Shown piece after piece: positions 1 through 23,115 of a DNA stretch of 35,830 nucleotides. The stretch covers positions 53,802,872 to 53,838,701 of the forward strand of contig NC_068986.1 of NCBI RefSeq assembly GCF_001194135.2, in the 5' to 3' direction. The number at the start of each line of letters is the position of its first letter. Position 1 is the stretch's first letter. The notes under the pieces are model-generated. The model was not told the DNA's origin and did no database searches. It saw only the letters and a program-made list of their open reading frames with translations. The position numbers and the translations under genes were made by a program. Source of the DNA: Octopus bimaculoides (Eukaryota).

Positions 1-184
1 TCGTAATACGGGTGGCTAGGATGTAGCCAACACTGCCAGATATTTTGAGCATCTCTGCAGTGATTCCTGATGGGCCGGGGGCTTTCCCTGTCTTCATACT
101 CTTAATTGCTTTATTTACCCTGGTACTATCAACTCGGATAGCTGGTCCCTCTATTGGGTCGACATACGGCAGGCTCTCTTCCTC
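1..184 (-). mobile_element. RTE-clade LINE ORF fragment, 5' truncated, continues off the window edge
   Basis: Open translation EEESLPYVDPIEGPAIRVDSTRVNKAIKSMKTGKAPGPSGITAEMLKISG, the KAPGPxG motif preceding non-LTR RT; homologous to 6590-6771. Confidence 0.85.
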
Positions 185-1559
185 CCAATATATATATATA
201 CATATATGTGTGTAGAGTGTTAGGTGCGATGTACAGAATTAAATATTGAAAAAAAAGGTCGTCAGAATTTTGGAATAACTTTTTTCATTTATTTTATGCA
301 TATATTAGCGCTTAAAATTAAAATTTCAATGTAGTAAGTACCCTTGATTAAAATAATAGTGACATGCAATCCTGAAAAGTAGTGTCACCCAATTTGGTAA
401 CTCTGAATTAGATATACCATGGATGGTGCTAACCCTTTTTGGGCACCCAATCTCTGCAGTGAACCACAATACAAAGAACAGTGCACTTCACCAGATGTGT
501 AAACCACACCCATATATTAATTATATAGAACAAAATGAGACATGTAATTGGAATTGGTTTGTTGCTGTTTCAAACTTCATTCTTCAGTCCCCACTACTAC
601 ATGAAATATCTCCTCCAGAAACATATATAACACTTCGGACTACTACTAGAACAACATCCTCAAAATACTCTCTCTTGTTCAGACAAGATAAACATTAGTA
701 CACATGCTTACAGAAATAGCTGCAGCATCAATAGCTTCACTGTCTTCCATCCAAACATGTTGCTCATTTTCACACCATCAATGGTGTTTGCTGAAGAACA
801 AGCAGCTCTCGCACTCCAGCTGAGTCCACTCTACTTACCTCCACTGTAGTCAGCACAAGAATCAGATATATAGCAAGCAAGCCAATGAGAGTGCCTCTGC
901 CTGGTCACTTGGCCTGCTAAAAATAGCAGCCAAATCTTACTCAATTCACTCGACAATTTATAAAAAGGACATGTAATAAGGTTTTGGATTCAATGAACAT
1001 GGGAGGAAAACCAGGATAGCCATAGGTGGAATACCTTTGATTATAGATCTGCTCAATCAGAGTTGACCTGGGGCTAAATAAATGTATAGAGACTAATTGA
1101 ACAGTGGAGAGTCTACATGTCCAAACTATATCTCTGCACTCTGTATAATTAACTACTGAATCTAGGAGTTCCCTGTGTGGCCCTCAGTTAAACAGATTCT
1201 TGGTATGTATACAAAATAAGAGTTTTGTGAGTTATGCCTTGTTGTTTGGCTGACGACTGAGACTCCACAATAACAATTGCTAGAAATTATTTACTTCAGA
1301 TATACCATTTGCACTGATGCAAATGAAGTAGTCATCATCATCGAGTGTACCTTAGCCTTCAAGGACCAATGACATCTTGCATTTGTAAGATTTGGGGTTA
1401 ATAGTCTGTTTGGCACAACTCTGCAACAGATGGAGCTTCTTTTCAGCTGAACCAATTGAAACAACATGAAATTAAGTACTTTGCCAAAGAATGCATATAG
1501 TCCAAGAATTAAATCTGTGGCCTTCAAATCATAAGTCAATAACCTAACCACTAGATTAA

Positions 1560-4742: not shown

Positions 4743-6775
4743 ATCATTTAACATCTGCCTTCCATGCTGGCATGGGTTGGACTGTTCGATAGGAGCTGGC
4801 AAGTCTGATGACTGTACCAAGCTCTACTGTCTGCTTTGGCATTGTTTCTTTGACTGGATGCCCTTCCTAACACTAACCACTTTACAGGGTACTTTTGATG
4901 TGGCCTCCATCACCAGCAAGGTCACCAAGTAACTTGCAACAGAAGAACCCTCAACTAGGAGGTAGAGGAATAATTATTGAGAGGTGGCTTTGTGCCAGGT
5001 GATGAAAAGTTAGTATATGATAGAGGGACTATAAAAGAAGTTTTGCTGTAGAGGAGATATATGGCTGTTCCAATTGAAAAAAGAGGGAGAAAGACAAGAT
5101 GGTGAGGATGTGTTAAGACAAACCTTTAAGTTACATGGTGTGGTAGTATATAAAGTGATAAAGAAGATTGGATAGGGTGAGTGAGCAGGTAAGTTTGCAA
5201 GAGAAGAGAGGAATGCAGTGTGTGGTGAACATGGGTGGAGGAAGAAGGGTTCTTGATGAGAATTTTGTCAAGGACATAGACATAAATGAATGCCTTTTAG
5301 GAGCTCAGTTTTACTTAGGTGGACTGTCTGCTCAAGCACAGCAAATTGCCAATCATTTCAATTCTTTGTCATCTCTTCTCTGATGTTCAGCATCTGAAGG
5401 TTATTTTTCACCACTTTGTTCCAAGTTTTCCTCTTCCATGGTTTCCATCCACATTTCGCACTTCTTTTAAGCAGCTGTCCTCATTGATACACACCACATG
5501 ACCATACCAGTGCAGCTTTCTCGCTTGTCCACTACTTCTGATACATTTTATGCCAATTTTTCTTTTACTACATTTACATTTTGTCATATATTGTATACCT
5601 AGCAGAACATGCTAGCTTCATTCTTTCAAGCCTTTACGTCTTCTGTATTCACAGCTCACATTTCTTTCAGAGATGCCCTTTATTGCCAGCAGAGGTAATA
5701 GTTTTCTGCACCTTCTCTAGCCAGTTCTTATTCTAGCAACTACACTTTCAGAGTACCTTCCTCCAGTGCTAATTAGGTCACCAAGGTATCACAAACTGTC
5801 TACTACCTCTAAAGATTCCCTAAAGCATATGAGAAAACCTATTTCCTGTGTCTTCTTAGTATTTACTGTTTTTGCACATGTGCCACATATACTATTTTCT
5901 CTTTTAACCTCTCACTGTACCTCTAATGTGTCCATATCTTGCGCTGGTACAATGTACAGAATTTCTACTTACATCTTTTTCTACACATTGAGCAAAACCA
6001 TCTTCCTGAAAGGATTAGCAATTTGTCAGTTTTCCTACTTCTGCTTCCACATCTGAAATTTCTTCTCTAATTCTACTATAGATTCAGCTTTAAGAATAAG
6101 GTCATCAGCATAGAGAAGCTTCCATAGGTAACCAGTCTTAAACTCTTCCATCATGACTTAGAGGACTATGATAAATATGATGGGGCTGAGAATTGAGCCC
6201 TGATGAACTCCTACCTGCTAAGTAAATTCATTGCTCTACTCATCTTACTGCACTCCTGTACATGGCTTGGACAGCTCTCACCAGCCATTCAAGTATCTCT
6301 AGCTTCCATAGTAACTACCAGATGAGAGAGCAAGGGACCCTGTCAAAGATTTTCTCTAAGTTGACAAATGGGAAGTATGGAGGTTTATTTTTGGTTAAAT
6401 GCTTCCCCTACAGTTGTCTTACAAAAAATGGTAGCATCAGCAGTGCTTCTCTATGGCACAAAACTAAACTGCATCTCATTCAGGCTAATTCTTTCATAAT
6501 TAGTTGAGCTATGATCCTTTCTGTAACTTTCCTTTGTAGCAGTTGACTATAATGCTTCAATACCAGTCATTGAGTATGATACCTTCCTGGACAATCTGAT
6601 TATACAGGTGATTAAGTTGTGTCCCACTCCACCAGATATTTTAAGCATCTTGGTAGTAACTCCTGATGGACCAGGGACTTTCTTTGTCTTCATATGCTTA
6701 ATTGCTTTATCTATCAAACTGCTGTCAACTTTGATAGCTGGGTCCACACGAGGAAGACTCTCCTTCCCCAAGAAG
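4743..6775 (-). mobile_element. Decayed RTE-clade LINE (RT, C-terminal region, probable 3' UTR)
   Basis: Minus-strand motifs KVPGPSG (about 6670), GVHQGSILSP (about 6182-6211), LLYADDL (YADD 6112-6101), LHWYGHV (about 5495); many stops/frameshifts. The 3' UTR extent is inferred. Confidence 0.88.
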
Positions 6776-6862
6776 ATGCTTGACCAAAGTACTGCAACAT
6801 GAGATTGAAACCAAAACCACGTGGTTGCAAAACAAATTTCTTAAAAACACAGCCATGGCTTG
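6776..6862 (-). mobile_element. Truncated SINE-A head (tRNA-like plus CORE-like) abutting the RTE 5' end
   Basis: Reverse complement (ggctgtg...aaccacgtggttttggtttcaatc...tactttggtcaagcatcttct) aligns by eye to the heads at 26588 and 33040. Confidence 0.6.
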
Positions 6863-9887: not shown

Positions 9888-10832
9888 TTACATCAATGCT
9901 TTTACTAATTCTGCTTTTGTCTTTTCCAAACATTCCTCAAGATCTTTGACTTTCAGCTTCAAATTTTCATTTTTTATACCAAGTTCTTCCAGTTCCTTCA
10001 AATCACTTTGATTCTTTTTCTTACGATTCTCTCTTGATTTGCGTGATGCTATATTATTTCGTCTTCTCCTTTCATTATATTTCTCAATTGCAGACATTTC
10101 ACCAGCTGTGAGAGATGATGTTGTCATTTGTCTATTGCTTACAGATATTTGGGCTGTATTGGAGATTTCACCTGCTAGACGAAGCTTCTTATTAGGACTA
10201 CAGTTGTGGTTTTCAACAGTTGTTGTTGTGGATGATGATGATGATGATGTACCTACTACATGACTGTTATTCAGTAATAATGAATGAGGTAGAGTGTAGC
10301 TCTGCCTCTTAAATGTAACTTTATTCTCAGGCACCTGTTTCAGGCATACTTTTTGTGAGTTTTGATGGGTTGAGGTAATTTGTTTCTTACCTTGTTCAGG
10401 AAAAACCTCAAGAATTTCATTTGTTGGAGGATAAGTCTTTGAATTCTGATCTATCATAGGGCAAGTCTTTATATTCTGATTTAACCCTGTATAAAGACTT
10501 GGTTTCTCATCTACTGTTGGGTAAATTTTCAGCTTTTCTTCTGCATCAGGGAAAGCAATATAACCAATTGGTTCAGAGTAAACTTCTAGGAGAGGGTCAA
10601 TTTCAGATGTATCACTTAGTTTCTGGTTTGTCTCCTGGTAAAACTCCAGCTTTTGATCATCTAAAGGTGACAAAATTTCCAGCATCTTATCTAATTCAGA
10701 GTAATGCTCATACAGTGGCTCTGATTCCAAGAGAGATGTTTGCGAATCAAGTAGGAGATCTGAATCAAAAGAAGTTTCTGTAGAACCTACACCTTGTGCA
10801 ATATTCTCATCCAAATACTTTTGGGAAGAATC
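9888..10832 (-). CDS. bZIP transcription factor (C/EBP/PAR-like), last coding exon with basic region and leucine zipper
   Basis: ORF ends KYNERRRRNNIASRKSRENRKKK..L278..L285..L292 (numbering from the 10814 ORF): N-x7-R basic motif, Tyr 7 residues before the invariant Asn, first zipper Leu 17 residues after the Arg, Asn at heptad a282. Acceptor ttttgtag|GAT at 10833-10834, phase 0; stop TAA 9890-9888. Confidence 0.93.
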   Translation of the reverse strand, partial: DSSQKYLDENIAQGVGSTETSFDSDLLLDSQTSLLESEPLYEHYSELDKMLEILSPLDDQKLEFYQETNQKLSDTSEIDPLLEVYSEPIGYIAFPDAEEKLKIYPTVDEKPSLYTGLNQNIKTCPMIDQNSKTYPPTNEILEVFPEQGKKQITSTHQNSQKVCLKQVPENKVTFKRQSYTLPHSLLLNNSHVVGTSSSSSSTTTTVENHNCSPNKKLRLAGEISNTAQISVSNRQMTTSSLTAGEMSAIEKYNERRRRNNIASRKSRENRKKKNQSDLKELEELGIKNENLKLKVKDLEECLEKTKAELVKALM

Positions 10833-13427: not shown

Positions 13428-13558
13428 AGCATCCAGTGGTAGAAGGAGTTTGGATATGTCATTTGAAAGTAACAAGCTGTCCAGGTCTGAAGGGAACTGT
13501 TCTGTTAAGAGATTCTCTTCAACATCAAAAGATCTGAGTTTTGTATTTGGGCTTGAAC
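13428..13558 (-). CDS. bZIP gene, middle coding exon (GSSPNTKLRSFDVEENLL...LLPLDA)
   Basis: Acceptor ttttttccccaccag|GT (phase 1), donor GCT|GTAAGT (phase 0, matches the 10832 acceptor); 131 nt, open, acidic/Leu-rich like the start of the next exon. Confidence 0.88.
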
Positions 13559-14211: not shown

Positions 14212-14233
14212 CTCTGTTAAATAGGCCATTCAT
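14212..14233 (-). CDS. bZIP gene, first in-frame coding segment (MNGLFNR-G)
   Basis: Consensus donor CAGAG|GTAAGT at 14211. Phase 1 is required by the next exon; in that frame the only AUG after an upstream TAA is aagATGa at 14233. The real start is uncertain (see findings). Confidence 0.6.
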
Positions 14234-14390
14234 CTTCGATACTGTACGTGGTTAAATAAGATGTGTCAATCACTGGGGTTTCAGCTGTTGGGGAGGTATC
14301 AAATATCTGGAATATATCATCAACAACGTCAGTTTGAAGATTTGTGGATTGGTCTTGGCATTCAAGATGAGTGTTGTCTTGTGACTGCAT
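14217..14390 (-). CDS. 57-aa upstream ORF overlapping the bZIP start out of frame (MQSQDNTHLE...SIEDEWPI*)
   Basis: atcATGc at 14390 is the first AUG after the 14618 and 14484 acceptors; stop TAA 14219-14217 lies 17 nt into the main ORF. Translation itself is inferred. Confidence 0.6.
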   Translation of the reverse strand: MQSQDNTHLECQDQSTNLQTDVVDDIFQIFDTSPTAETPVIDTSYLTTYSIEDEWPI

Positions 14391-14484
14391 GATTAAATTA
14401 GTAAATAGTTCCGTGTTGTCAATAACAAAAGTATTACTTGCAGCTATTTTGCTTCCTTCTTTTTTCACTTTTGTTCCTTTCAAC
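14234..14484 (-). other. 5' leader portion of the exon ending at donor 14211
   Basis: Candidate acceptor aaccccttcag|GTTG at 14485-14486; alternatively contiguous with the 14618 exon if the 53-nt intron is retained. Confidence 0.55.
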
Positions 14485-14537
14485 CTGAAGGGGTTGTTCA
14501 GACTGTTGTATCTGGTGACTAACTGATGTTAGCTAAC

Positions 14538-14618
14538 CTGATCCAAACAGACTGCCTACTGTTGCCCTAAACAACAAGGCTAGACACAAGTGCCTAGTGC
14601 AACACGTCTTCCCCTGCC
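14538..14618 (-). other. Non-coding 5' UTR exon (81 nt)
   Basis: Strong acceptor taattttttgttttttcttcag|GGC at 14619-14620; donor CAG|GTTAGC at 14537; no AUG. Confidence 0.6.
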
Positions 14619-14907
14619 CTGAAGAAAAAACAAAAAATTAAATTAAAATTTAGAACAGTGTTTAAATATATTTTTGTTTTCTTTTTATTTTGACAAAGCA
14701 TAAAGTCATCATAACAAAAGGGAAGTTGTGATATCCATATACCTAATGCACCATTTTCCTTTTCTATAAAAACCAAATCAATTTGTCAGCCTATGATTGA
14801 ACATGTCTCATATCAAAAGCACTTAAGCTTTAATCATTCAGTCATACTCTTTTTAGGTATAGTGTATGTAGGACTATATCATCTTCAATACGTAAGTATG
14901 CTCAACC

Positions 14908-18724: not shown

Positions 18725-20983
18725 AACTGTGAAGCTATATAAGAGACTCAAAAAAACAGAGTTTCAGACAAAAAAAGAACTTGTGAAATTTTGGCTTGAC
18801 AAATGTTTTGGAACACTTCAGTTACTTATGTTGCTTCACAGCTAATAATTCGTGTGTGTGTGTAGTTCTTCACGCACGGGATAGCTTATATAGAGCGACG
18901 GCAAGATAAAATGCCCCCGTTCTACAACTGTACAATATACACAACAGTAAGTTGACCGGTTTTCGCTGTCGGTGAGCGAGCAAGCAAGACGATGCGGGCA
19001 ATGACAACAACAAAAAAAGTGGGTGGTGAAACAAGAAATAAATGTACTTAATAAAAACGATTATTATCTATAATTTTGGAGTTGTATTTTTTACACAACT
19101 TGCTTGAGAGATCGTGTGTTGAAGCTGTTACAATGACAGCATGGAAAAGTCATAACAATTACACCCACTTACACTTTTGGTGAGTACTGAAATGCGTCAA
19201 AAGAAATTCGTCGCGCATTTACGATTTGGTTAATGACACTGTTCCATTATTTGAAGCCTTTGAGGAACAACTAACATAGGTTTTAGACGAAGTTAGATGT
19301 TGATCGGGCGGCCGGGAGGCGGATTAGTGATTTCGGTGTTTAAATAAACAAGTGAATAAAAAAAAAACTGCATGTTTCTATATTTCTCAAAAATGGTTAA
19401 CAAAACCTTTTCACAAAATAAGTACACACACACACACACAGAGTTATGGTCTGATCTAATCATCAAACGCTGTAACAACCGTGACCACCTGCTCATATAT
19501 ATATATATATATATANNNNNNNNNNNNNNNNNNNNNNNNNNNNNNNNNNNNNNNNNNNNNNNNNNNNNNNNNNNNNNNNNNNNNNNNNNNNNNNNNNNNN
19601 NNNNNNNNNNNNNNNNNNNNNNNNNNNNNNNNNNNNNNNNNNNNNNNNNNNNNNNNNNNNNNNNNNNNNNNNNNNNNNNNNNNNNNNNNNNNNNNNNNNN
19701 NNNNNNNNNNNNNNNNNNNNNNNNNNNNNNNNNNNNNNNNNNNNNNNNNNNNNNNNNNNNNNNNNNNNNNNNNNNNNNNNNNNNNNNNNNNNNNNNNNNN
19801 NNNNNNNNNNNNNNNNNNNNNNNNNNNNNNNNNNNNNNNNNNNNNNNNNNNNNNNNNNNNNNNNNNNNNNNNNNNNNNNNNNNNNNNNNNNNNNNNNNNN
19901 NNNNNNNNNNNNNNNNNNNNNNNNNNNNNNNNNNNNNNNNNNNNNNNNNNNNNNNNNNNNNNNNNNNNNNNNNNNNNNNNNNNNNNNNNNNNNNNNNNNN
20001 NNNNNNNNNNNNNNNNNNNNNNNNNNNNNTTTTTTTTTTTTTTTTTTGAAATGACAATTTAGAATTACTACATCGAGTAAACGGAGTATAGACTAAATGG
20101 CATGAAAGAGAAGGAAAATGAGGAAAATATAGGCGAATGAACGAAGTATATAATTTCAAGTGTTTGGAAACATATCAGTAAATTCAATAACAATACGAAA
20201 AAAAAAAAGTTTTCTTTTTCGGGGCGGGTGAAGTTATGTGTCATTAAACAATATTGCTAAAATGCTAATCCAATTAGATCGAAACCCCCAAAATAATAAG
20301 AAAATAATAATGAAAAACGGGGAGAAAATGGAAAAACGTGTGTTACCTTCGGTAGTTCTTATACTTCTAAACAGTAAAAATACAAACACGGATGTGGTGC
20401 AATCGTGAGTTATTTTAAAATTTTGACGTCATTTCTGTCCAATTACACAAGTCTCTGTCTGTCACTCAGTTTTTTTGTCTCTCACTCTCTTTCTTTTACT
20501 CTTTCTCTCTCACTTTACTTTTTGTCTATCTCAGTCACATTGTCACATTCATGATCATCGTCAAATCTCCCTCAAACCATATTTTAACATCTTAAGCAAA
20601 AACAAACAAATAATAAAAAATATAATTTAAACATTGGTAAAGATTGACAAGGGTACACTATTCTCTTAAGTAATAATAATAATAAAAAAACGGATGGTAA
20701 TACTTAAGTGTCTTTCGTCATAAGCCTTCTCGGTCCAAGCGGACAGCAACCGTCTCCAAAGTTACATCATATCGTATCGTAGCACATTATATATAATATA
20801 TATGAGAAAGTGAAATTTTTCTGAGTAGGCCGAAGTTGCCGTTGGGCTTTATCCTGGAAGCGGGTGGGGCCTCTCCACTTCTTGTCAAATATTCAGAAGG
20901 ACCCTTCTTGAATGCCCGGACCCGTCCTTAGGGCTCCAGGCCCTGAACCGATGCCCCGGCTGAATTCCCATGTCGTGTACGCC

Positions 20984-21449: not shown

Positions 21450-23115
21450 CTAATCCTGGGGATTCATCCACACTGCAGTAAAGGAGAATGTCCTACAGCT
21501 CTATCATTTTGCTTGGCAAGCTTACTGGGAGCCCTCCTACCTCTCCTTTGGTAACCATCTCATCTGCCTCTGCTGTCCAACAGGGTGACCCATTTAGACC
21601 TGCTCCGTTTGCACTGGGTATTAATGATGTTACCCAGATGGAAGCTGGCCTGGACTTGAATGTCTGGTATCTTGATGTTGCTTGTTTGGGGATCCCTCCT
21701 GATAAAGTCCTTGCAACTGCAAGGACAATGATTCAGGAACTTGGTCATAGGAGCCTTAGTGTTAACAGTTCCAAATGCGAGCTCTGGCTCCTCAACTATC
21801 CAGCTTCACATCAGCAGACTGTAAACCTGTTTACAGACTCTTTCCCCTCACTTGCAGTTCCTCCTTTATCAGCATGTTGCTCTCTTGAAGCCCCAGTTAC
21901 TGACTGAGCTTTCAAGTCAATCTTTCAATTCAAGATGGCTAACTTTTATAAAGCCTTGAGGTAATTGAACAACTTTTAAAAAAACCTTGAGATAATTGAG
22001 CCCCACCAAGGCTTTTTATACTTAGGAATTACTTGACAATTTCTAAGTTATTGTATTTTCTCAGAGTTAGTCCTTCTTATAGATTCTTGTCATTTTTCTA
22101 ACTCAAATGTCAGACTCTAGAGTCCTGTGACAGGCTTTACCCAAATGGTTTGAGGACCCAAGTCTACATAAGTGCTTGTCTCTATTTCTTCCTTGTTTTC
22201 TTTCTCCCATCCATGCTTGCTCCCCTTTAGAAGGTAACATCTTCTCCTCTCCAACATAGACTAGTTCCAACAGGAAGATGGATAAAGCTCTCTTACAATG
22301 GAGAGAACTGAGTTTGTTAGTTCCTGTTACAATTGAAGATAGATGGAGGCAGAGAGTATAGGACAATCTGCGCTCAAGTGCAACTTTCAACTCCTTGATC
22401 AATCTGATCAATTTCCAAGATGTTGCCTACTTTCTACTAGTGTAAAATTCTTGGGGGACTGGGTTGATGCCTTGCCTGCAGCCAACATTGGTGGTCTACT
22501 CAGTCTAGATGAGCTCTGCATCTCCATCACACTCAGAGTGGGAGACAACATCTATCAGAGACTGAAATGTTGCTGTGGTAGGCCCCTCAACTTCATAGGT
22601 CTTCATGGTTTGTCTTGTCACCTAAATGCTGGTTGTTTCGCTCATTACACCAAGCTAAACTTAATCATTAAGCAGGCCCTGGCTCAGGTTAATATCTCCT
22701 CAGTTCTGGAGCCAGCAGAATTATCCAGAAGTGATGGGAAGAGACCAGATGGCCTTACCATTTATCCCTAAGTAAGAAATAAGTGATTCAACTGGGACAT
22801 CACAGTCTATGACTCCACTTCTTCCCACCACATCCTGGATGCTGTGGTGAATGGGAGGGTCACTGCTTCCATTGCTGAACAGAACAAAATCTTTATGTAT
22901 CAGGACCTGTCAGTGAACTATCTATTCCAGCCTGTTGCATTTGAGACGTTTGGTGGGGTTGGGCAAGTTCTCGACATTGTTGGTGGCTTACCTTACCAAG
23001 ATGTCAGGTGATGCCTGTAAGAGTGCTTGGCTGTTTCAATGCCTTATCTTCGCCATCACCTGTGGTAATGCCACGAGTATGTTGGACTGCTTCAGTAGGT
23101 TCCATTGAACCTTGT
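21450..23115 (+). mobile_element. Decayed CRE-clade-like non-LTR retrotransposon (RT, CCHC knuckle, restriction-like endonuclease)
   Basis: VQQGDP, WYLD, LSVNSSKCEL (RT); WVDALP..LRVG..CCCG..HGLSC (Zn knuckle); LEP..SDGKRPDGLT..WDITV..PVAFETFG and a terminal CGNATSMLD motif; multiple stops and frameshifts. Confidence 0.82.

What the first reader, a model, noticed from the sequence alone, without database searches (positions are those of the whole stretch)
14212..14390. ATF4-style overlapping uORF on an uncharacterised C/EBP/PAR-like bZIP gene
Seen: the first AUG in the visible leader (14390, A at -3) opens a 57-codon ORF that runs across the only in-frame bZIP AUG (14233) in another frame and stops 17 nt later. 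Known: ATF4, ATF5 and C. elegans zip-2 are repressed by overlapping uORFs and induced when translation is stressed; Drosophila Xrp1 is PERK-induced. Inference: this could be a cephalopod stress-induced bZIP switch under translational control.
Basis: partly seen in the sequence, partly recalled or inferred. Interest (0 to 1): 0.8.

Follow-up and report, generated by a model that had tools for sequence, protein, structure and literature searches.

The report
Two-frame switch in octopus bZIP gene
The 57-codon "upstream ORF" is real, but it is the conserved first half of a two-reading-frame bZIP transcription-factor gene shared by molluscs and brachiopods, and it is most likely joined to the DNA-binding half when the ribosome slips +1 at its stop codon, as recently proposed for the nematode stress sensor ZIP-2.

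Summary
On the minus strand, AUG 14390 (A at -3) opens a 57-codon ORF whose UAA (14219-14217) lies 17 nt into the annotated Octopus bimaculoides bZIP ORF (LOC106880144, AUG 14233), which sits in the +1 frame. It is not an assembly error: O. vulgaris, Argonauta hians and an octopod RNA contig keep the same layout. The ORF1 peptide is as constrained as the bZIP domain (pN/pS about 0.26).

The same junction occurs in about 35 invertebrate transcript or genomic contigs and, as a +1-frame shadow, in annotated bivalve, gastropod and brachiopod proteins. The motif is UGG CCU NUU URA C. The leaders are AUG-free, and ORF1's AUG is the first in the mRNA. No ORF2 AUG is conserved, and three contigs have none.

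The wobble phase shifts by +1 exactly at the stop, and +4 is C in 32 of 33. Most lineages, but not octopods, have a stem-loop 10 nt downstream. One relative encodes ORF1 and ORF2 as a single continuous ORF.

The best reading is a ZIP-2-type +1 frameshift switch coupled to the stop codon, not ATF4-style delayed reinitiation (there is no uORF1). A purely repressive conserved-peptide uORF remains a live rival, especially in octopods. All evidence is computational.

The parts
20288..20491 (-). Conserved promoter and exon-1 block about 5.7 kb upstream of exon A. It holds TGACGTCA (20431-20424) and ATTGCACCA (20403-20395). Exon 1 ends at 20347 with donor AAG|GTAACA.
   Evidence: This is the only block upstream of exon A that is conserved between Argonauta, O. 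vulgaris and the window. The sequences were read. The 5' end of RNA contig L001 (gaccgcctaag) matches the exon-1 end of O. vulgaris and Argonauta. The transcription start was not mapped.
14391..14618 (-). AUG-free 5' leader part of exon A (acceptor cag|GGCAGGGG at 14619|14618). The 5' 127 nt are highly conserved and predicted to be structured.
   Evidence: No ATG in 228-251 nt in four octopods, against 4.1-4.9 expected. Alignment and consensus fold of -31 kcal/mol, with no compensatory pairs.
14217..14390 (-). It encodes an acidic peptide with two family-wide motifs: DDIFQIFD (family consensus SLDELVDLLDI) and TSYLTTYSIEDEWPI-stop (family consensus TTFGTEDxWPI-stop).
   Evidence: Obim-Argonauta pN 0.20, pS 0.78; differences by codon position 11/10/29. 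Family alignment of ORF1 peptides. hhalign of the C-terminus gives E=1.8e-5.
14216..14228 (-). Proposed +1 shift site: UGG CCU AUU UAA C, that is W-P-I-stop followed by C at +4. The P-site codon AUU (14222-14220) would re-pair on UUU (14221-14219), and AAC (14218-14216) would be read next.
   Evidence: Motif statistics over 33 non-redundant junctions: CCT 31/33, NTT 33/33, TAA/TGA/TAG 16/16/1, +4 C 32/33. The +4 C compared with codon usage gives P about 1e-6. All four octopods are invariant across 22 nt here, although synonymous sites elsewhere are near saturation.
14231..14233 (-). Annotated bZIP start codon (MNGLFNR...), four codons upstream of the Phe codon (TTT 14221-14219) that overlaps ORF1's stop, in the +1 frame.
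   Evidence: In the family, an ATG at this position appears only where ORF1 has GAT-GAR (L009 has it, close relative L007 does not). Other lineages have ORF2-frame ATGs at -5 to -80 codons, or none.
14212..14618 (-). Exon A, with donor AG|GTAAGT at 14212|14211. This phase-1 intron lies 5 nt after the stop codon.
   Evidence: The spliced RNA contig L001 confirms this junction. The same intron position is seen in Argonauta and in genomic contigs L009 and L049.
13428..13558 (-). Exon B, the ORF2 coding segment (GSSPNTKLRSFDVEENLL...LPLDA).
9888..10832 (-). Exon C, the ORF2 coding segment through stop TAA 9890-9888. The bZIP domain lies at about 10088-9924.
   Evidence: Pfam bZIP_2 E=2.7e-7. C/EBP beta and alpha are the best solved-structure hits.

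Best explanation
ORF1 (14390-14217) and the bZIP ORF are two halves of one gene product. Shown: the gene belongs to a family spanning at least Mollusca and Brachiopoda in which coding selection runs in the ORF1 frame up to a fixed stop codon and in the +1 frame from that codon onward. Inferred mechanism: ribosomes scan an AUG-free leader and initiate at AUG 14390. They translate the conserved acidic 57-residue segment and arrive with AUU in the P site and UAA-C in the A site. Most terminate, releasing the short peptide, and no bZIP protein is made. A fraction slip +1, with tRNA-Ile re-pairing from AUU to UUU. They then read AAC and continue through exons B and C to make a 417-aa protein consisting of the ORF1 domain plus the C/EBP-like bZIP (...EDEWPI-NRGSSPN...). 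By analogy with C. elegans ZIP-2 (PMC11831180), the slip frequency would rise when elongation or termination is perturbed, so the mRNA would act as a translation-stress sensor. ORF1 initiation would at the same time suppress initiation at AUG 14233. The regulatory input is inferred, not shown.
For: (1) Layout and the extra T are conserved in four octopods, including an RNA contig. (2) The ORF1 peptide is under purifying selection (Obim-Argonauta pN/pS about 0.26, third-position excess 11/10/29). That equals the bZIP domain (0.17-0.44) and is stronger than the rest of ORF2 (0.41-0.84). (3) The same junction is present in about 35 contigs from unrelated samples. It also appears as the +1-frame shadow '..QKTSGLF[DN]..' in about 50 of the 150 best family proteins, including Ruditapes, Littorina, Elysia, Biomphalaria and Lingula. 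No contig that reached the N-terminal region lacked it. (4) The motif is UGG CCU NUU URA C. The P-site codon is always NUU (AUU/GUU/CUU/UUU), so the +1 codon is always UUU. CUU_UGA_C in L011 and L028 is the classical prfB shift site (own knowledge). The +4 base is C in 32/33 although it is a synonymous site, with C-ending usage averaging 0.57 overall and 0.23 in the octopod. (5) The coding frame switches at the stop. Pooled pN/pS upstream is 0.43 in the ORF1 frame against 1.18 and 1.09 in the other two frames. Downstream it is 0.52 in the ORF2 frame against 0.92 and 1.25. On frame-blind nucleotide alignments the wobble excess moves from offset 2 (127/130/188, p=3e-4) to offset 0 (295/227/190, p=6e-6). 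(6) ORF2 has no conserved AUG. Positions vary from -4 to -80 codons, mostly in poor context. L013, L015 and L026 have none before conserved, selected ORF2 sequence; their next Met is at +71, +80 and +15. (7) ORF1's AUG is the first AUG in 25 of 27 transcript contigs and has a purine at -3 in 21 of 24. (8) The 60 nt after the stop are uniquely structured: mean z -1.9 and MFE -17.8, against about -0.3 and -11.7 in 22 other windows. A stem-loop begins 10 nt after the stop and shows compensatory changes. (9) P0134 is a natural single ORF that is colinear with the conceptual fusion across the junction but lacks the 13-residue shift cassette. (10) There is a published genetic precedent in ZIP-2, and NCBI names the Littorina ortholog 'zip-2-like'.
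Against: There is no experimental evidence for any member of this family: no ribosome profiling, junction peptide or reporter. Octopods lack the +10 stem-loop. They also carry an ORF2-frame AUG with A at -3 only four codons before the junction Phe codon, so AUG-initiated synthesis of the annotated 365-aa protein is plausible in this species. Most other lineages also have some ORF2-frame AUG upstream. UAA is normally an efficient terminator. Dual coding could explain the invariance of CCU and NUU, although not of the +4 C. The pN/pS alignments were guided by the tested frame; one search is the unbiased check. Most related contigs come from unidentified organisms and are phylogenetically non-independent, so the P values are optimistic. 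Homology to C. elegans ZIP-2 itself was not tested. P0134 could be an alternatively spliced mRNA, in which case splicing rather than slippage might create the fusion in some species.
Confidence: 0.55

Rival explanations
1. ORF1 is a conserved-peptide overlapping uORF and nothing more. It captures scanning ribosomes, and its peptide or termination event acts in cis (stalling) or as a separate micropeptide. The bZIP protein is made only from AUG 14233, reached by leaky scanning, stress-induced bypass, or termination-coupled backward reinitiation 14 nt upstream of the stop. This is the Xrp1 / CHOP / ATF4-uORF2 style of control.
For: AUG 14233 has A at -3 and is kept in all four octopods. The overlap is only 17 nt, within reach of post-termination backward scanning (own knowledge). 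Drosophila Xrp1, another C/EBP-family bZIP, has an out-of-frame overlapping uORF2 whose AUG represses the main ORF (PMC13268129). In C. elegans zip-2, loss of the oORF AUG activates via the mORF AUG, so start-codon competition does exist. Octopods lack the downstream hairpin found elsewhere. Peptide conservation is also typical of stalling uORFs.
Against: There is no uORF1 for ATF4-type delayed reinitiation. Leaky scanning would have to pass AUG 14390 (A at -3) and two further internal AUGs at 14361 and 14320. The octopod AUG is accounted for by GAT-GAA codons in an AT-rich genome, and the equivalent AUG comes and goes between close relatives (L009 versus L007). Three lineages have no usable ORF2 AUG. 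This reading does not explain the +4 C, the invariant NUU-U, the frame switch of selection exactly at the stop, or the continuous-ORF relative P0134.
Confidence: 0.28
2. The fusion is made by RNA processing, not by the ribosome. An alternative 5' splice site inside ORF1 (TACA|GTATCG at 14247|14246, phase-compatible with exon B), or removal of a 3n+1 cassette, joins ORF1 to ORF2 in frame.
For: Using that donor gives a continuous ORF1-ORF2 reading frame. The GT is kept in all four octopods (AGT/GGT). P0134 lacks exactly a 13-residue cassette across the junction, as a spliced isoform would.
Against: The donor matches the consensus poorly (ACA|GTATCG against MAG|GTRAGT). The GT is absent at that position in other lineages (for example GGA in L005). 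The only octopod RNA contig and more than 25 transcript contigs all retain the cassette. NCBI isoforms X1 and X2 differ only inside exon C. Hairpin loops do not consistently fit an IRE1-type CNGCNGN site.
Confidence: 0.08
3. It is an artefact: a one-base assembly or sequencing error, or a recently frameshifted pseudogene.
For: The window is a draft assembly with many N gaps. Deleting one T would make the ORF continuous.
Against: The same three Ts are present in three other octopod assemblies or transcripts and in dozens of independent contigs. Both ORFs are under purifying selection.
Confidence: 0.01

Closest known systems
C. elegans ZIP-2 oORF/mORF switch (Kniazeva & Ruvkun, PNAS 2025, PMC11831180)
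   Same: A C/EBP-like bZIP is encoded in a downstream ORF that is +1 relative to an upstream overlapping ORF with a conserved peptide. The upstream AUG is the one normally used. The mORF AUG is variable and dispensable. The proposed active product is an oORF-mORF fusion made by a +1 frameshift. NCBI labels a gastropod member of the present family 'zip-2-like'.
   Different: In ZIP-2 the overlap is 121 codons, no shift site is defined, and conservation was examined only within Caenorhabditis. Here the productive window is at most 11 codons in octopus. The site is a fixed stop-codon motif (NUU_URA_C), usually followed by a stem-loop, and it is conserved across phyla. Sequence homology to ZIP-2 was not tested here.
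Antizyme (OAZ) and bacterial prfB +1 frameshifting at a stop codon
   Same: ORF1 ends at a stop codon that forms part of the shift site, and ORF2 is +1. The termination context is weak (stop followed by C, as in prfB CUU_UGA_C and yeast OAZ1 UGA_C; own knowledge). There is a 3' RNA structure in most lineages, and a sensor logic is plausible.
   Different: The gene class differs (a transcription factor), the P-site codon differs (NUU rather than UCC), the effector is unknown, and no experiment has been done.
ATF4 / ATF5 uORF2
   Same: A roughly 59-codon upstream ORF overlaps the bZIP start out of frame.
   Different: ATF4 needs a short reinitiation-permissive uORF1, which is absent here. ATF4's main AUG is conserved and its uORF2 peptide is not a conserved protein module (own knowledge).
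Drosophila Xrp1 uORF2 (PMC13268129)
   Same: It is an invertebrate C/EBP-family bZIP with an out-of-frame overlapping uORF that represses the main ORF. Induction unexpectedly needs main-ORF sequence as well.
   Different: Xrp1 has a uORF1 in isoform F and no reported frameshift. No homology of its uORF peptide was tested.
XBP1/HAC1
   Same: A bZIP factor whose active form requires joining two reading frames on one mRNA.
   Different: Joining there is by IRE1 cleavage and ligation of a 26-nt (XBP1) intron. The loops here do not fit that signal, and all transcripts retain the cassette.

Membership tests
ZIP-2-type oORF-to-mORF +1 frameshift bZIP | The bZIP lies at the C-terminus of a downstream ORF that is in the +1 frame relative to an upstream overlapping ORF. 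| tested here: met
ZIP-2-type oORF-to-mORF +1 frameshift bZIP | The upstream ORF peptide is conserved (under selection). | tested here: met
ZIP-2-type oORF-to-mORF +1 frameshift bZIP | The mORF AUG is variable in position or dispensable. | tested here: met
   By comparison only: positions run from -4 to -80 codons, and L013, L015 and L026 have none. Dispensability in octopus was not tested.
ZIP-2-type oORF-to-mORF +1 frameshift bZIP | A fused product is induced by inhibition of elongation, independently of eIF2-alpha phosphorylation. | not testable with these tools
   Needs reporters, profiling or proteomics.
ZIP-2-type oORF-to-mORF +1 frameshift bZIP | Sequence homology to C. elegans ZIP-2 or its oORF. 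| not tested
The only hint is NCBI's 'zip-2-like' name for the Littorina ortholog.
Stop-codon-coupled +1 programmed frameshift (antizyme/prfB type) | ORF1's stop is part of a conserved shift site whose P-site tRNA can re-pair in the +1 frame. | tested here: met
   NUU_URA_C in 33/33 junctions, and the +1 codon is always UUU.
Stop-codon-coupled +1 programmed frameshift (antizyme/prfB type) | Nucleotide-level constraint beyond either coding frame (weak termination context). | tested here: met
   +4 C in 32/33 against codon usage of 0.57.
Stop-codon-coupled +1 programmed frameshift (antizyme/prfB type) | A 3' stimulatory RNA structure. | tested here: inconclusive
   A stem-loop 10 nt after the stop is present in about 17 of 25 lineages and shows covariation. 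It was not found in the four octopods.
Stop-codon-coupled +1 programmed frameshift (antizyme/prfB type) | A trans-frame protein is demonstrated. | not testable with these tools
   The only indirect support is the continuous-ORF relative P0134.
ATF4/GCN4-type delayed reinitiation | A short 5'-proximal uORF1 that permits reinitiation. | tested here: not met
   There is no AUG upstream of ORF1's AUG in exon A of four octopods or in 25 of 27 related transcript contigs. Exon 1 is short and its visible end has no ATG.
ATF4/GCN4-type delayed reinitiation | An inhibitory uORF overlaps the main AUG out of frame. | tested here: met
C/EBP-like bZIP | Basic region and leucine zipper most similar to C/EBP proteins. 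| tested here: met
   Pfam bZIP_2. Solved-structure hits are C/EBP beta and alpha at E about 1e-4 to 4e-3, with NFIL3 weaker.

The most novel reading that the evidence does not exclude
The junction is an ancient cis-encoded sensor of ribosome performance: a stop-codon-coupled +1 frameshift cassette made of the nascent TTFGTEDxWPI peptide, NUU_URA_C and a 3' hairpin. It would gate production of a C/EBP-like transcription factor across Lophotrochozoa and be homologous to nematode ZIP-2. That would make it the second deeply conserved cellular +1 recoding event in animals after antizyme, and a protostome-wide translation-surveillance pathway.
Probability: 0.4. Interest if true: 0.9.

Novelty: new variant of a known kind. 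Interest (0 to 1): 0.75.

Why it matters
If the frameshift reading is right, three things follow. First, the gene models for this family are wrong at the N-terminus in every annotated mollusc and brachiopod genome examined here. Gnomon picks arbitrary ORF2-frame or internal Mets: Ruditapes isoforms X1 and X2 start at different Mets, and Lingula carries a 100-residue out-of-frame extension. Second, antizyme would no longer be the only conserved cellular +1 frameshift in animals. Third, the recently proposed but mechanistically undefined ZIP-2 frameshift switch would gain a sharply defined, phylogenetically validated shift site that can be put straight into reporters. That would make it directly testable how cells read out translation stress without eIF2-alpha signalling. 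Even under the rival reading, this is one of the most deeply conserved peptide-coding upstream ORFs known in invertebrates.

Tried and rejected
- **Assembly frameshift:** rejected by four octopod sequences and dozens of contigs.
- **ATF4-type uORF1:** searched for in exon A, exon 1 and related transcripts, and not found.
- **Profile search with the ORF1 peptide in the 5.8-billion-protein index:** returned only the L001 ORF. The word index was too insensitive. The family was reached through the bZIP ORF instead.
- **Pfam on ORF1 and on conceptual fusions:** only the bZIP domain was found.
- **A-to-I editing of the stop:** this cannot change the frame. Read-through in the ORF1 frame would run only about 12 more codons (reasoned).
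- **Termination-reinitiation as the general mechanism:** a nearby ORF2 AUG exists only in some lineages.
- **IRE1-like unconventional splicing:** a CUGCAGA loop occurs in a few hairpins only, there is no second hairpin, and all transcripts keep the cassette.
- **Alternative donor at 14247|14246:** phase-compatible but weak, and not conserved outside octopods.
- **3' hairpin in octopods:** no conserved structure at +10; only weak, inconsistent pairings further downstream.
- **Taxon names for ten further family proteins:** only Lingula carried a name.
- **Supplement of the ZIP-2 paper, sought for sequences:** not held.
- **Pfam on repeated ORF fragments elsewhere in the window:** no hits.
Full report
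**1. What is in the window**

The gene lies on the minus strand and is Octopus bimaculoides LOC106880144. Joining exon A (to 14212), exon B (13558-13428) and exon C (10832-9888) from ATG 14233 reproduces XP_014785465.1 exactly. That protein is 365 aa with Pfam bZIP_2 at its C-terminus. Its closest solved relatives are C/EBP beta and alpha, then NFIL3.

- ATG 14390 (TTAATCATGC, A at -3) opens 57 codons ending at TAA 14219-14217.
- This is 17 nt past ATG 14233, which is in the +1 frame.
- The donor AG|GTAAGT follows 5 nt later.
- Exon A begins at acceptor 14619|14618, and its 228-nt leader has no ATG (4.6 expected; 0.8% of shuffles have none).
- The main frame is closed by TAA 14254-14252, six codons upstream of 14233.

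A short upstream exon ends at 20347. It sits inside the only upstream block conserved with O. vulgaris and Argonauta. That block holds a TGACGTCA site and an ATTGCACCA site.

**2. Not an error, and the ORF1 peptide is under selection**

O. vulgaris (L003), Argonauta hians (L004) and a spliced RNA contig from an 'octopus' metatranscriptome (L001, SRR3401912; identified in PMC11662614) all have the same features. These are the same first AUG, an ORF of 57-61 codons, the same TAA, the same 17-nt overlap and the same CCTATTTAAC.

Argonauta differs by two in-frame indels. Over the 51 non-overlapping codons, Octopus versus Argonauta gives pN 0.20 and pS 0.78, with differences by codon position of 11/10/29. 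This is the same constraint as on the bZIP domain (pN/pS 0.17-0.44). It is much tighter than on the rest of the annotated protein (0.41-0.84).

The 22 nt around the junction are invariant in all four species although synonymous sites elsewhere are near saturation.

**3. The arrangement is far older than cephalopods**

A profile of the octopod proteins retrieved a transcript, L005, from another invertebrate metatranscriptome.
- Its first AUG opens a 69-codon ORF ending ...SFTTFGTEDKWPI-TGA.
- That ORF overlaps, in the +1 frame, a bZIP ORF reading ...QKTSGLFDTVHAG....
- It has no ATG at the octopus 'main AUG' position (GAC AAG instead of GAT GAA).
- The C-terminal 13 residues align with the octopod ORF1 (hhalign E=1.8e-5).

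An exhaustive HMMER search found 958 family members at E<=1e-3. About 50 of the best 150 carry '[SL]R.xQKT[SC]GLF[DN]TGxAG' near their called N-terminus. This string is the +1-frame shadow of '...TTFGTEDKWPI-stop'. F is always followed by D or N, which means the ORF1 frame always has TGA or TAA there.

Named members are:
- Ruditapes philippinarum ('VBP-like' isoforms X1 and X2, which start at different Mets);
- Littorina saxatilis ('zip-2-like');
- Elysia marginata;
- Biomphalaria pfeifferi;
- Lingula anatina.

A scan of JGI contigs with the bZIP ORF gave 76 loci. This query is blind to the junction. Every locus that reached the N-terminal region had the junction, about 35 in all, including the variants WPV, WPL, WPF and WHF.

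**4. Anatomy of the junction across the family**

Over 33 non-redundant junctions:

| Feature | Count |
|---|---|
| TGG | 33/33 |
| Pro codon CCT | 31/33 |
| P-site codon ATT / GTT / CTT | 26 / 5 / 2 (TTT in two more contigs) |
| Stop TAA / TGA / TAG | 16 / 16 / 1 |
| Next base (+4) C | 32/33 |

W, P/A, I/V/L/M and the stop were required by the search pattern. The third positions and +4 were not.

The +4 C is a synonymous site of ORF2's Asp or Asn codon. C-ending usage for these codons averages 0.57 in the same mRNAs and is 0.23 in the octopod. That gives P about 1e-6 if lineages are treated as independent.

The +1 codon is therefore always UUU. The site has the form NUU_URA_C, which includes the literal prfB site CUU_UGA_C. 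The prfB comparison, and C after a stop being the weakest eukaryotic termination context, are from my own knowledge.

Further features:
- ORF1's AUG is the first AUG of the contig in 25 of 27 transcript contigs (leaders 77-287 nt). It has a purine at -3 in 21 of 24.
- ORF2-frame AUGs upstream of the junction sit at -4, -5, -11 ... -80 codons. Only 13 of 38 have a purine at -3, and they differ between close relatives.
- L013, L015 and L026 have no such AUG. In L013 and L015 the next ORF2 Met is 71-80 codons downstream, beyond the conserved PYDCFDSF motif. That stretch is under purifying selection (pN/pS 0.34).

**5. The coding frame switches at the stop**

Over 15 related pairs, pooled pN/pS was as follows:

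| Region | ORF1 frame | ORF2 frame | Third frame |
|---|---|---|---|
| Upstream of the junction | 0.43 | 1.18 | 1.09 |
| Downstream of the junction | 1.25 | 0.52 | 0.92 |

Those alignments were guided by the tested frame, so I repeated the test on frame-blind nucleotide alignments. Upstream differences fall at offsets 0/1/2 as 127/130/188 (excess at the ORF1 wobble position, p=3e-4). Downstream they fall as 295/227/190 (excess at the ORF2 wobble position, p=6e-6).

So the ORF2 frame is not a selected protein upstream of the stop, even where it contains AUGs. It is selected immediately after the stop.

**6. A positioned RNA structure**

The 60 nt following the stop are the only strongly structured window along these mRNAs:

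| Measure | Window after the stop | 22 other windows |
|---|---|---|
| Mean z | -1.90 | -0.9 to +0.5 |
| Mean MFE (kcal/mol) | -17.8 | about -11.7 |
| Share with z<-2 | 48% | mostly <=12%, up to 28% |

In about 17 of 25 lineages a 9-13-bp stem-loop starts 10 nt after the stop. Its 5' arm covers the A-G-D/N codons. Its sequence differs between lineages while pairing is kept. In a gap-free subgroup, 96.7% of cells pair, with compensatory changes at two pairs.

The four octopods do not show this hairpin.

**7. A natural fusion**

P0134 (196 aa) is a single called ORF. Its N-terminus carries the ORF1 motifs (SLDQLVDWLDI ... DIQHF), and it continues in frame into the ORF2 motifs and the bZIP. It is colinear with the conceptual +1 fusion of L019 (50% identity over 151 residues, E=7e-31). 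The exception is a 13-residue gap covering exactly 'STFSTDDEWPI/NTGGT'.

Whether this arose by deletion or by splicing, it shows that ORF1 and ORF2 sequences occur in one polypeptide.

**8. Interpretation**

The simplest account of all this is that ORF1 is the true N-terminal coding segment, a conserved acidic module. The bZIP ORF would be reached by a +1 slip at NUU_URA_C, competing with termination. This is inference; nothing here measures translation.

It matches the genetic model just published for C. elegans ZIP-2 (PMC11831180):
- an upstream overlapping ORF in the -1 frame relative to the mORF is the one normally translated;
- elongation inhibitors activate ZIP-2 without needing the mORF AUG;
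- an oORF-mORF fusion by +1 frameshift is proposed;
- the response is independent of GCN2, PERK and eIF2-alpha phosphorylation;
- loss of the oORF AUG activates through the mORF AUG.

That paper defines no shift site and looks only within Caenorhabditis. I found no paper describing the lophotrochozoan arrangement.

For the octopus itself I hold the frameshift reading at about 0.55. The lineage has lost the hairpin and has a well-placed AUG four codons before the junction. The annotated 365-aa protein could therefore also be produced, and ORF1 could act mainly as a repressor, as Xrp1 uORF2 does (PMC13268129). The two mechanisms are not exclusive; in ZIP-2 both operate.

**9.

An out-of-frame overlapping upstream ORF on a C/EBP-like bZIP with probable translational control is correct. 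'ATF4-style' and 'cephalopod' are not. The stated refutation criterion (one fewer T in orthologs) is not met. Notably, that very T is the base a +1 slip would skip.

**10. Limits**

- All evidence is comparative.
- Most related contigs are from unidentified organisms and are not independent.
- Homology to ZIP-2 rests on an annotation label.
- The transcription start and possible further 5' exons were not mapped with reads.

Noticed in passing
window 20288-20491 (-): The only upstream block conserved with O. vulgaris and Argonauta lies just 5' of the short exon 1 (donor at 20347|20346). It contains a perfect CRE/ATF palindrome TGACGTCA (20431-20424; TGACATCA in Argonauta) and a C/EBP-ATF-like ATTGCACCA (20403-20395). 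This suggests bZIP (auto)regulation of the promoter.
   Followed up: partly
window 14492-14618 (-): The 5' half of the exon-A leader is more conserved between Octopus and Argonauta than the synonymous sites of ORF1. It folds into a predicted -31 kcal/mol structure with hairpins ACAAGTG...CACTTGT and CTAAC-ATCA-GTTAG. There are no compensatory pairs, so structure is unproven.
   Followed up: partly
window 14391-14531 (-): The ORF1 frame is open for 46 codons upstream of AUG 14390, back to TAA 14531-14529. Length differences among octopods in this stretch are all multiples of 3 (138/129/138/153 nt). In the 21 codons before the AUG, substitutions among three Octopus-like species fall 4/2/9 by codon position. 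A conserved in-frame CUG sits at 14501-14499. This is possibly a near-cognate-initiated N-terminal extension; the evidence is weak (p about 0.07).
   Followed up: partly
window 14212|14211; L004 10022; L009 about 1218; L049 about 1411: A phase-1 intron lies 5 nt after the ORF1 stop in octopods and in two unrelated genomic contigs. The shift site therefore sits within the region where an exon-junction complex would be deposited, and termination at ORF1 leaves downstream exon junctions (possible NMD coupling, as discussed for zip-2).
   Followed up: no
family junction, position -10 relative to the stop (octopus 14229): The codon before TGG encodes a highly variable residue (K/E/Q/R/M/L) but ends in G in 29 of 33 junctions. 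Octopods are the exception, with GAA. This hints at a nucleotide-level requirement upstream of the slip site.
   Followed up: no
window 14217-14390 (-): The O. bimaculoides ORF1 peptide contains no Lys or Arg at all, so tryptic proteomics would miss both it and the junction peptide. O. vulgaris has one Lys.
   Followed up: no
P0007 versus P0008 (O. sinensis LOC115212945): Isoforms X1 and X2 differ only by an internal 10-residue segment (PNNLPMTDQK) within exon C. O. bimaculoides lacks this segment.
   Followed up: partly
P0161/P0160 (Ruditapes), P0156 (Lingula), P0045, P0023: The N-termini of the public gene models for this family are inconsistent. They use arbitrary ORF2-frame Mets up to 100 residues upstream of the junction, or internal Mets downstream, so out-of-frame sequence is annotated as protein.
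   Followed up: partly
window 2-238 (-) and 6550-6840 (-); also 21482-23008 (+): There are repeated ORF fragments sharing 'PGPSG[IV]T..MLKISG.VG', and a cluster of 74-142-aa open frames on the plus strand. They are probably decayed mobile-element copies. None has a Pfam hit. The window also has many N gaps and CA/TA microsatellites.
   Followed up: partly
L016, L042, L043 hairpin loops: The 7-nt loop of the post-stop hairpin reads CUGCAGA in some gastropod-like lineages, which resembles the IRE1 cleavage-loop consensus. It is not general across the family and no second hairpin was seen.
   Followed up: partly
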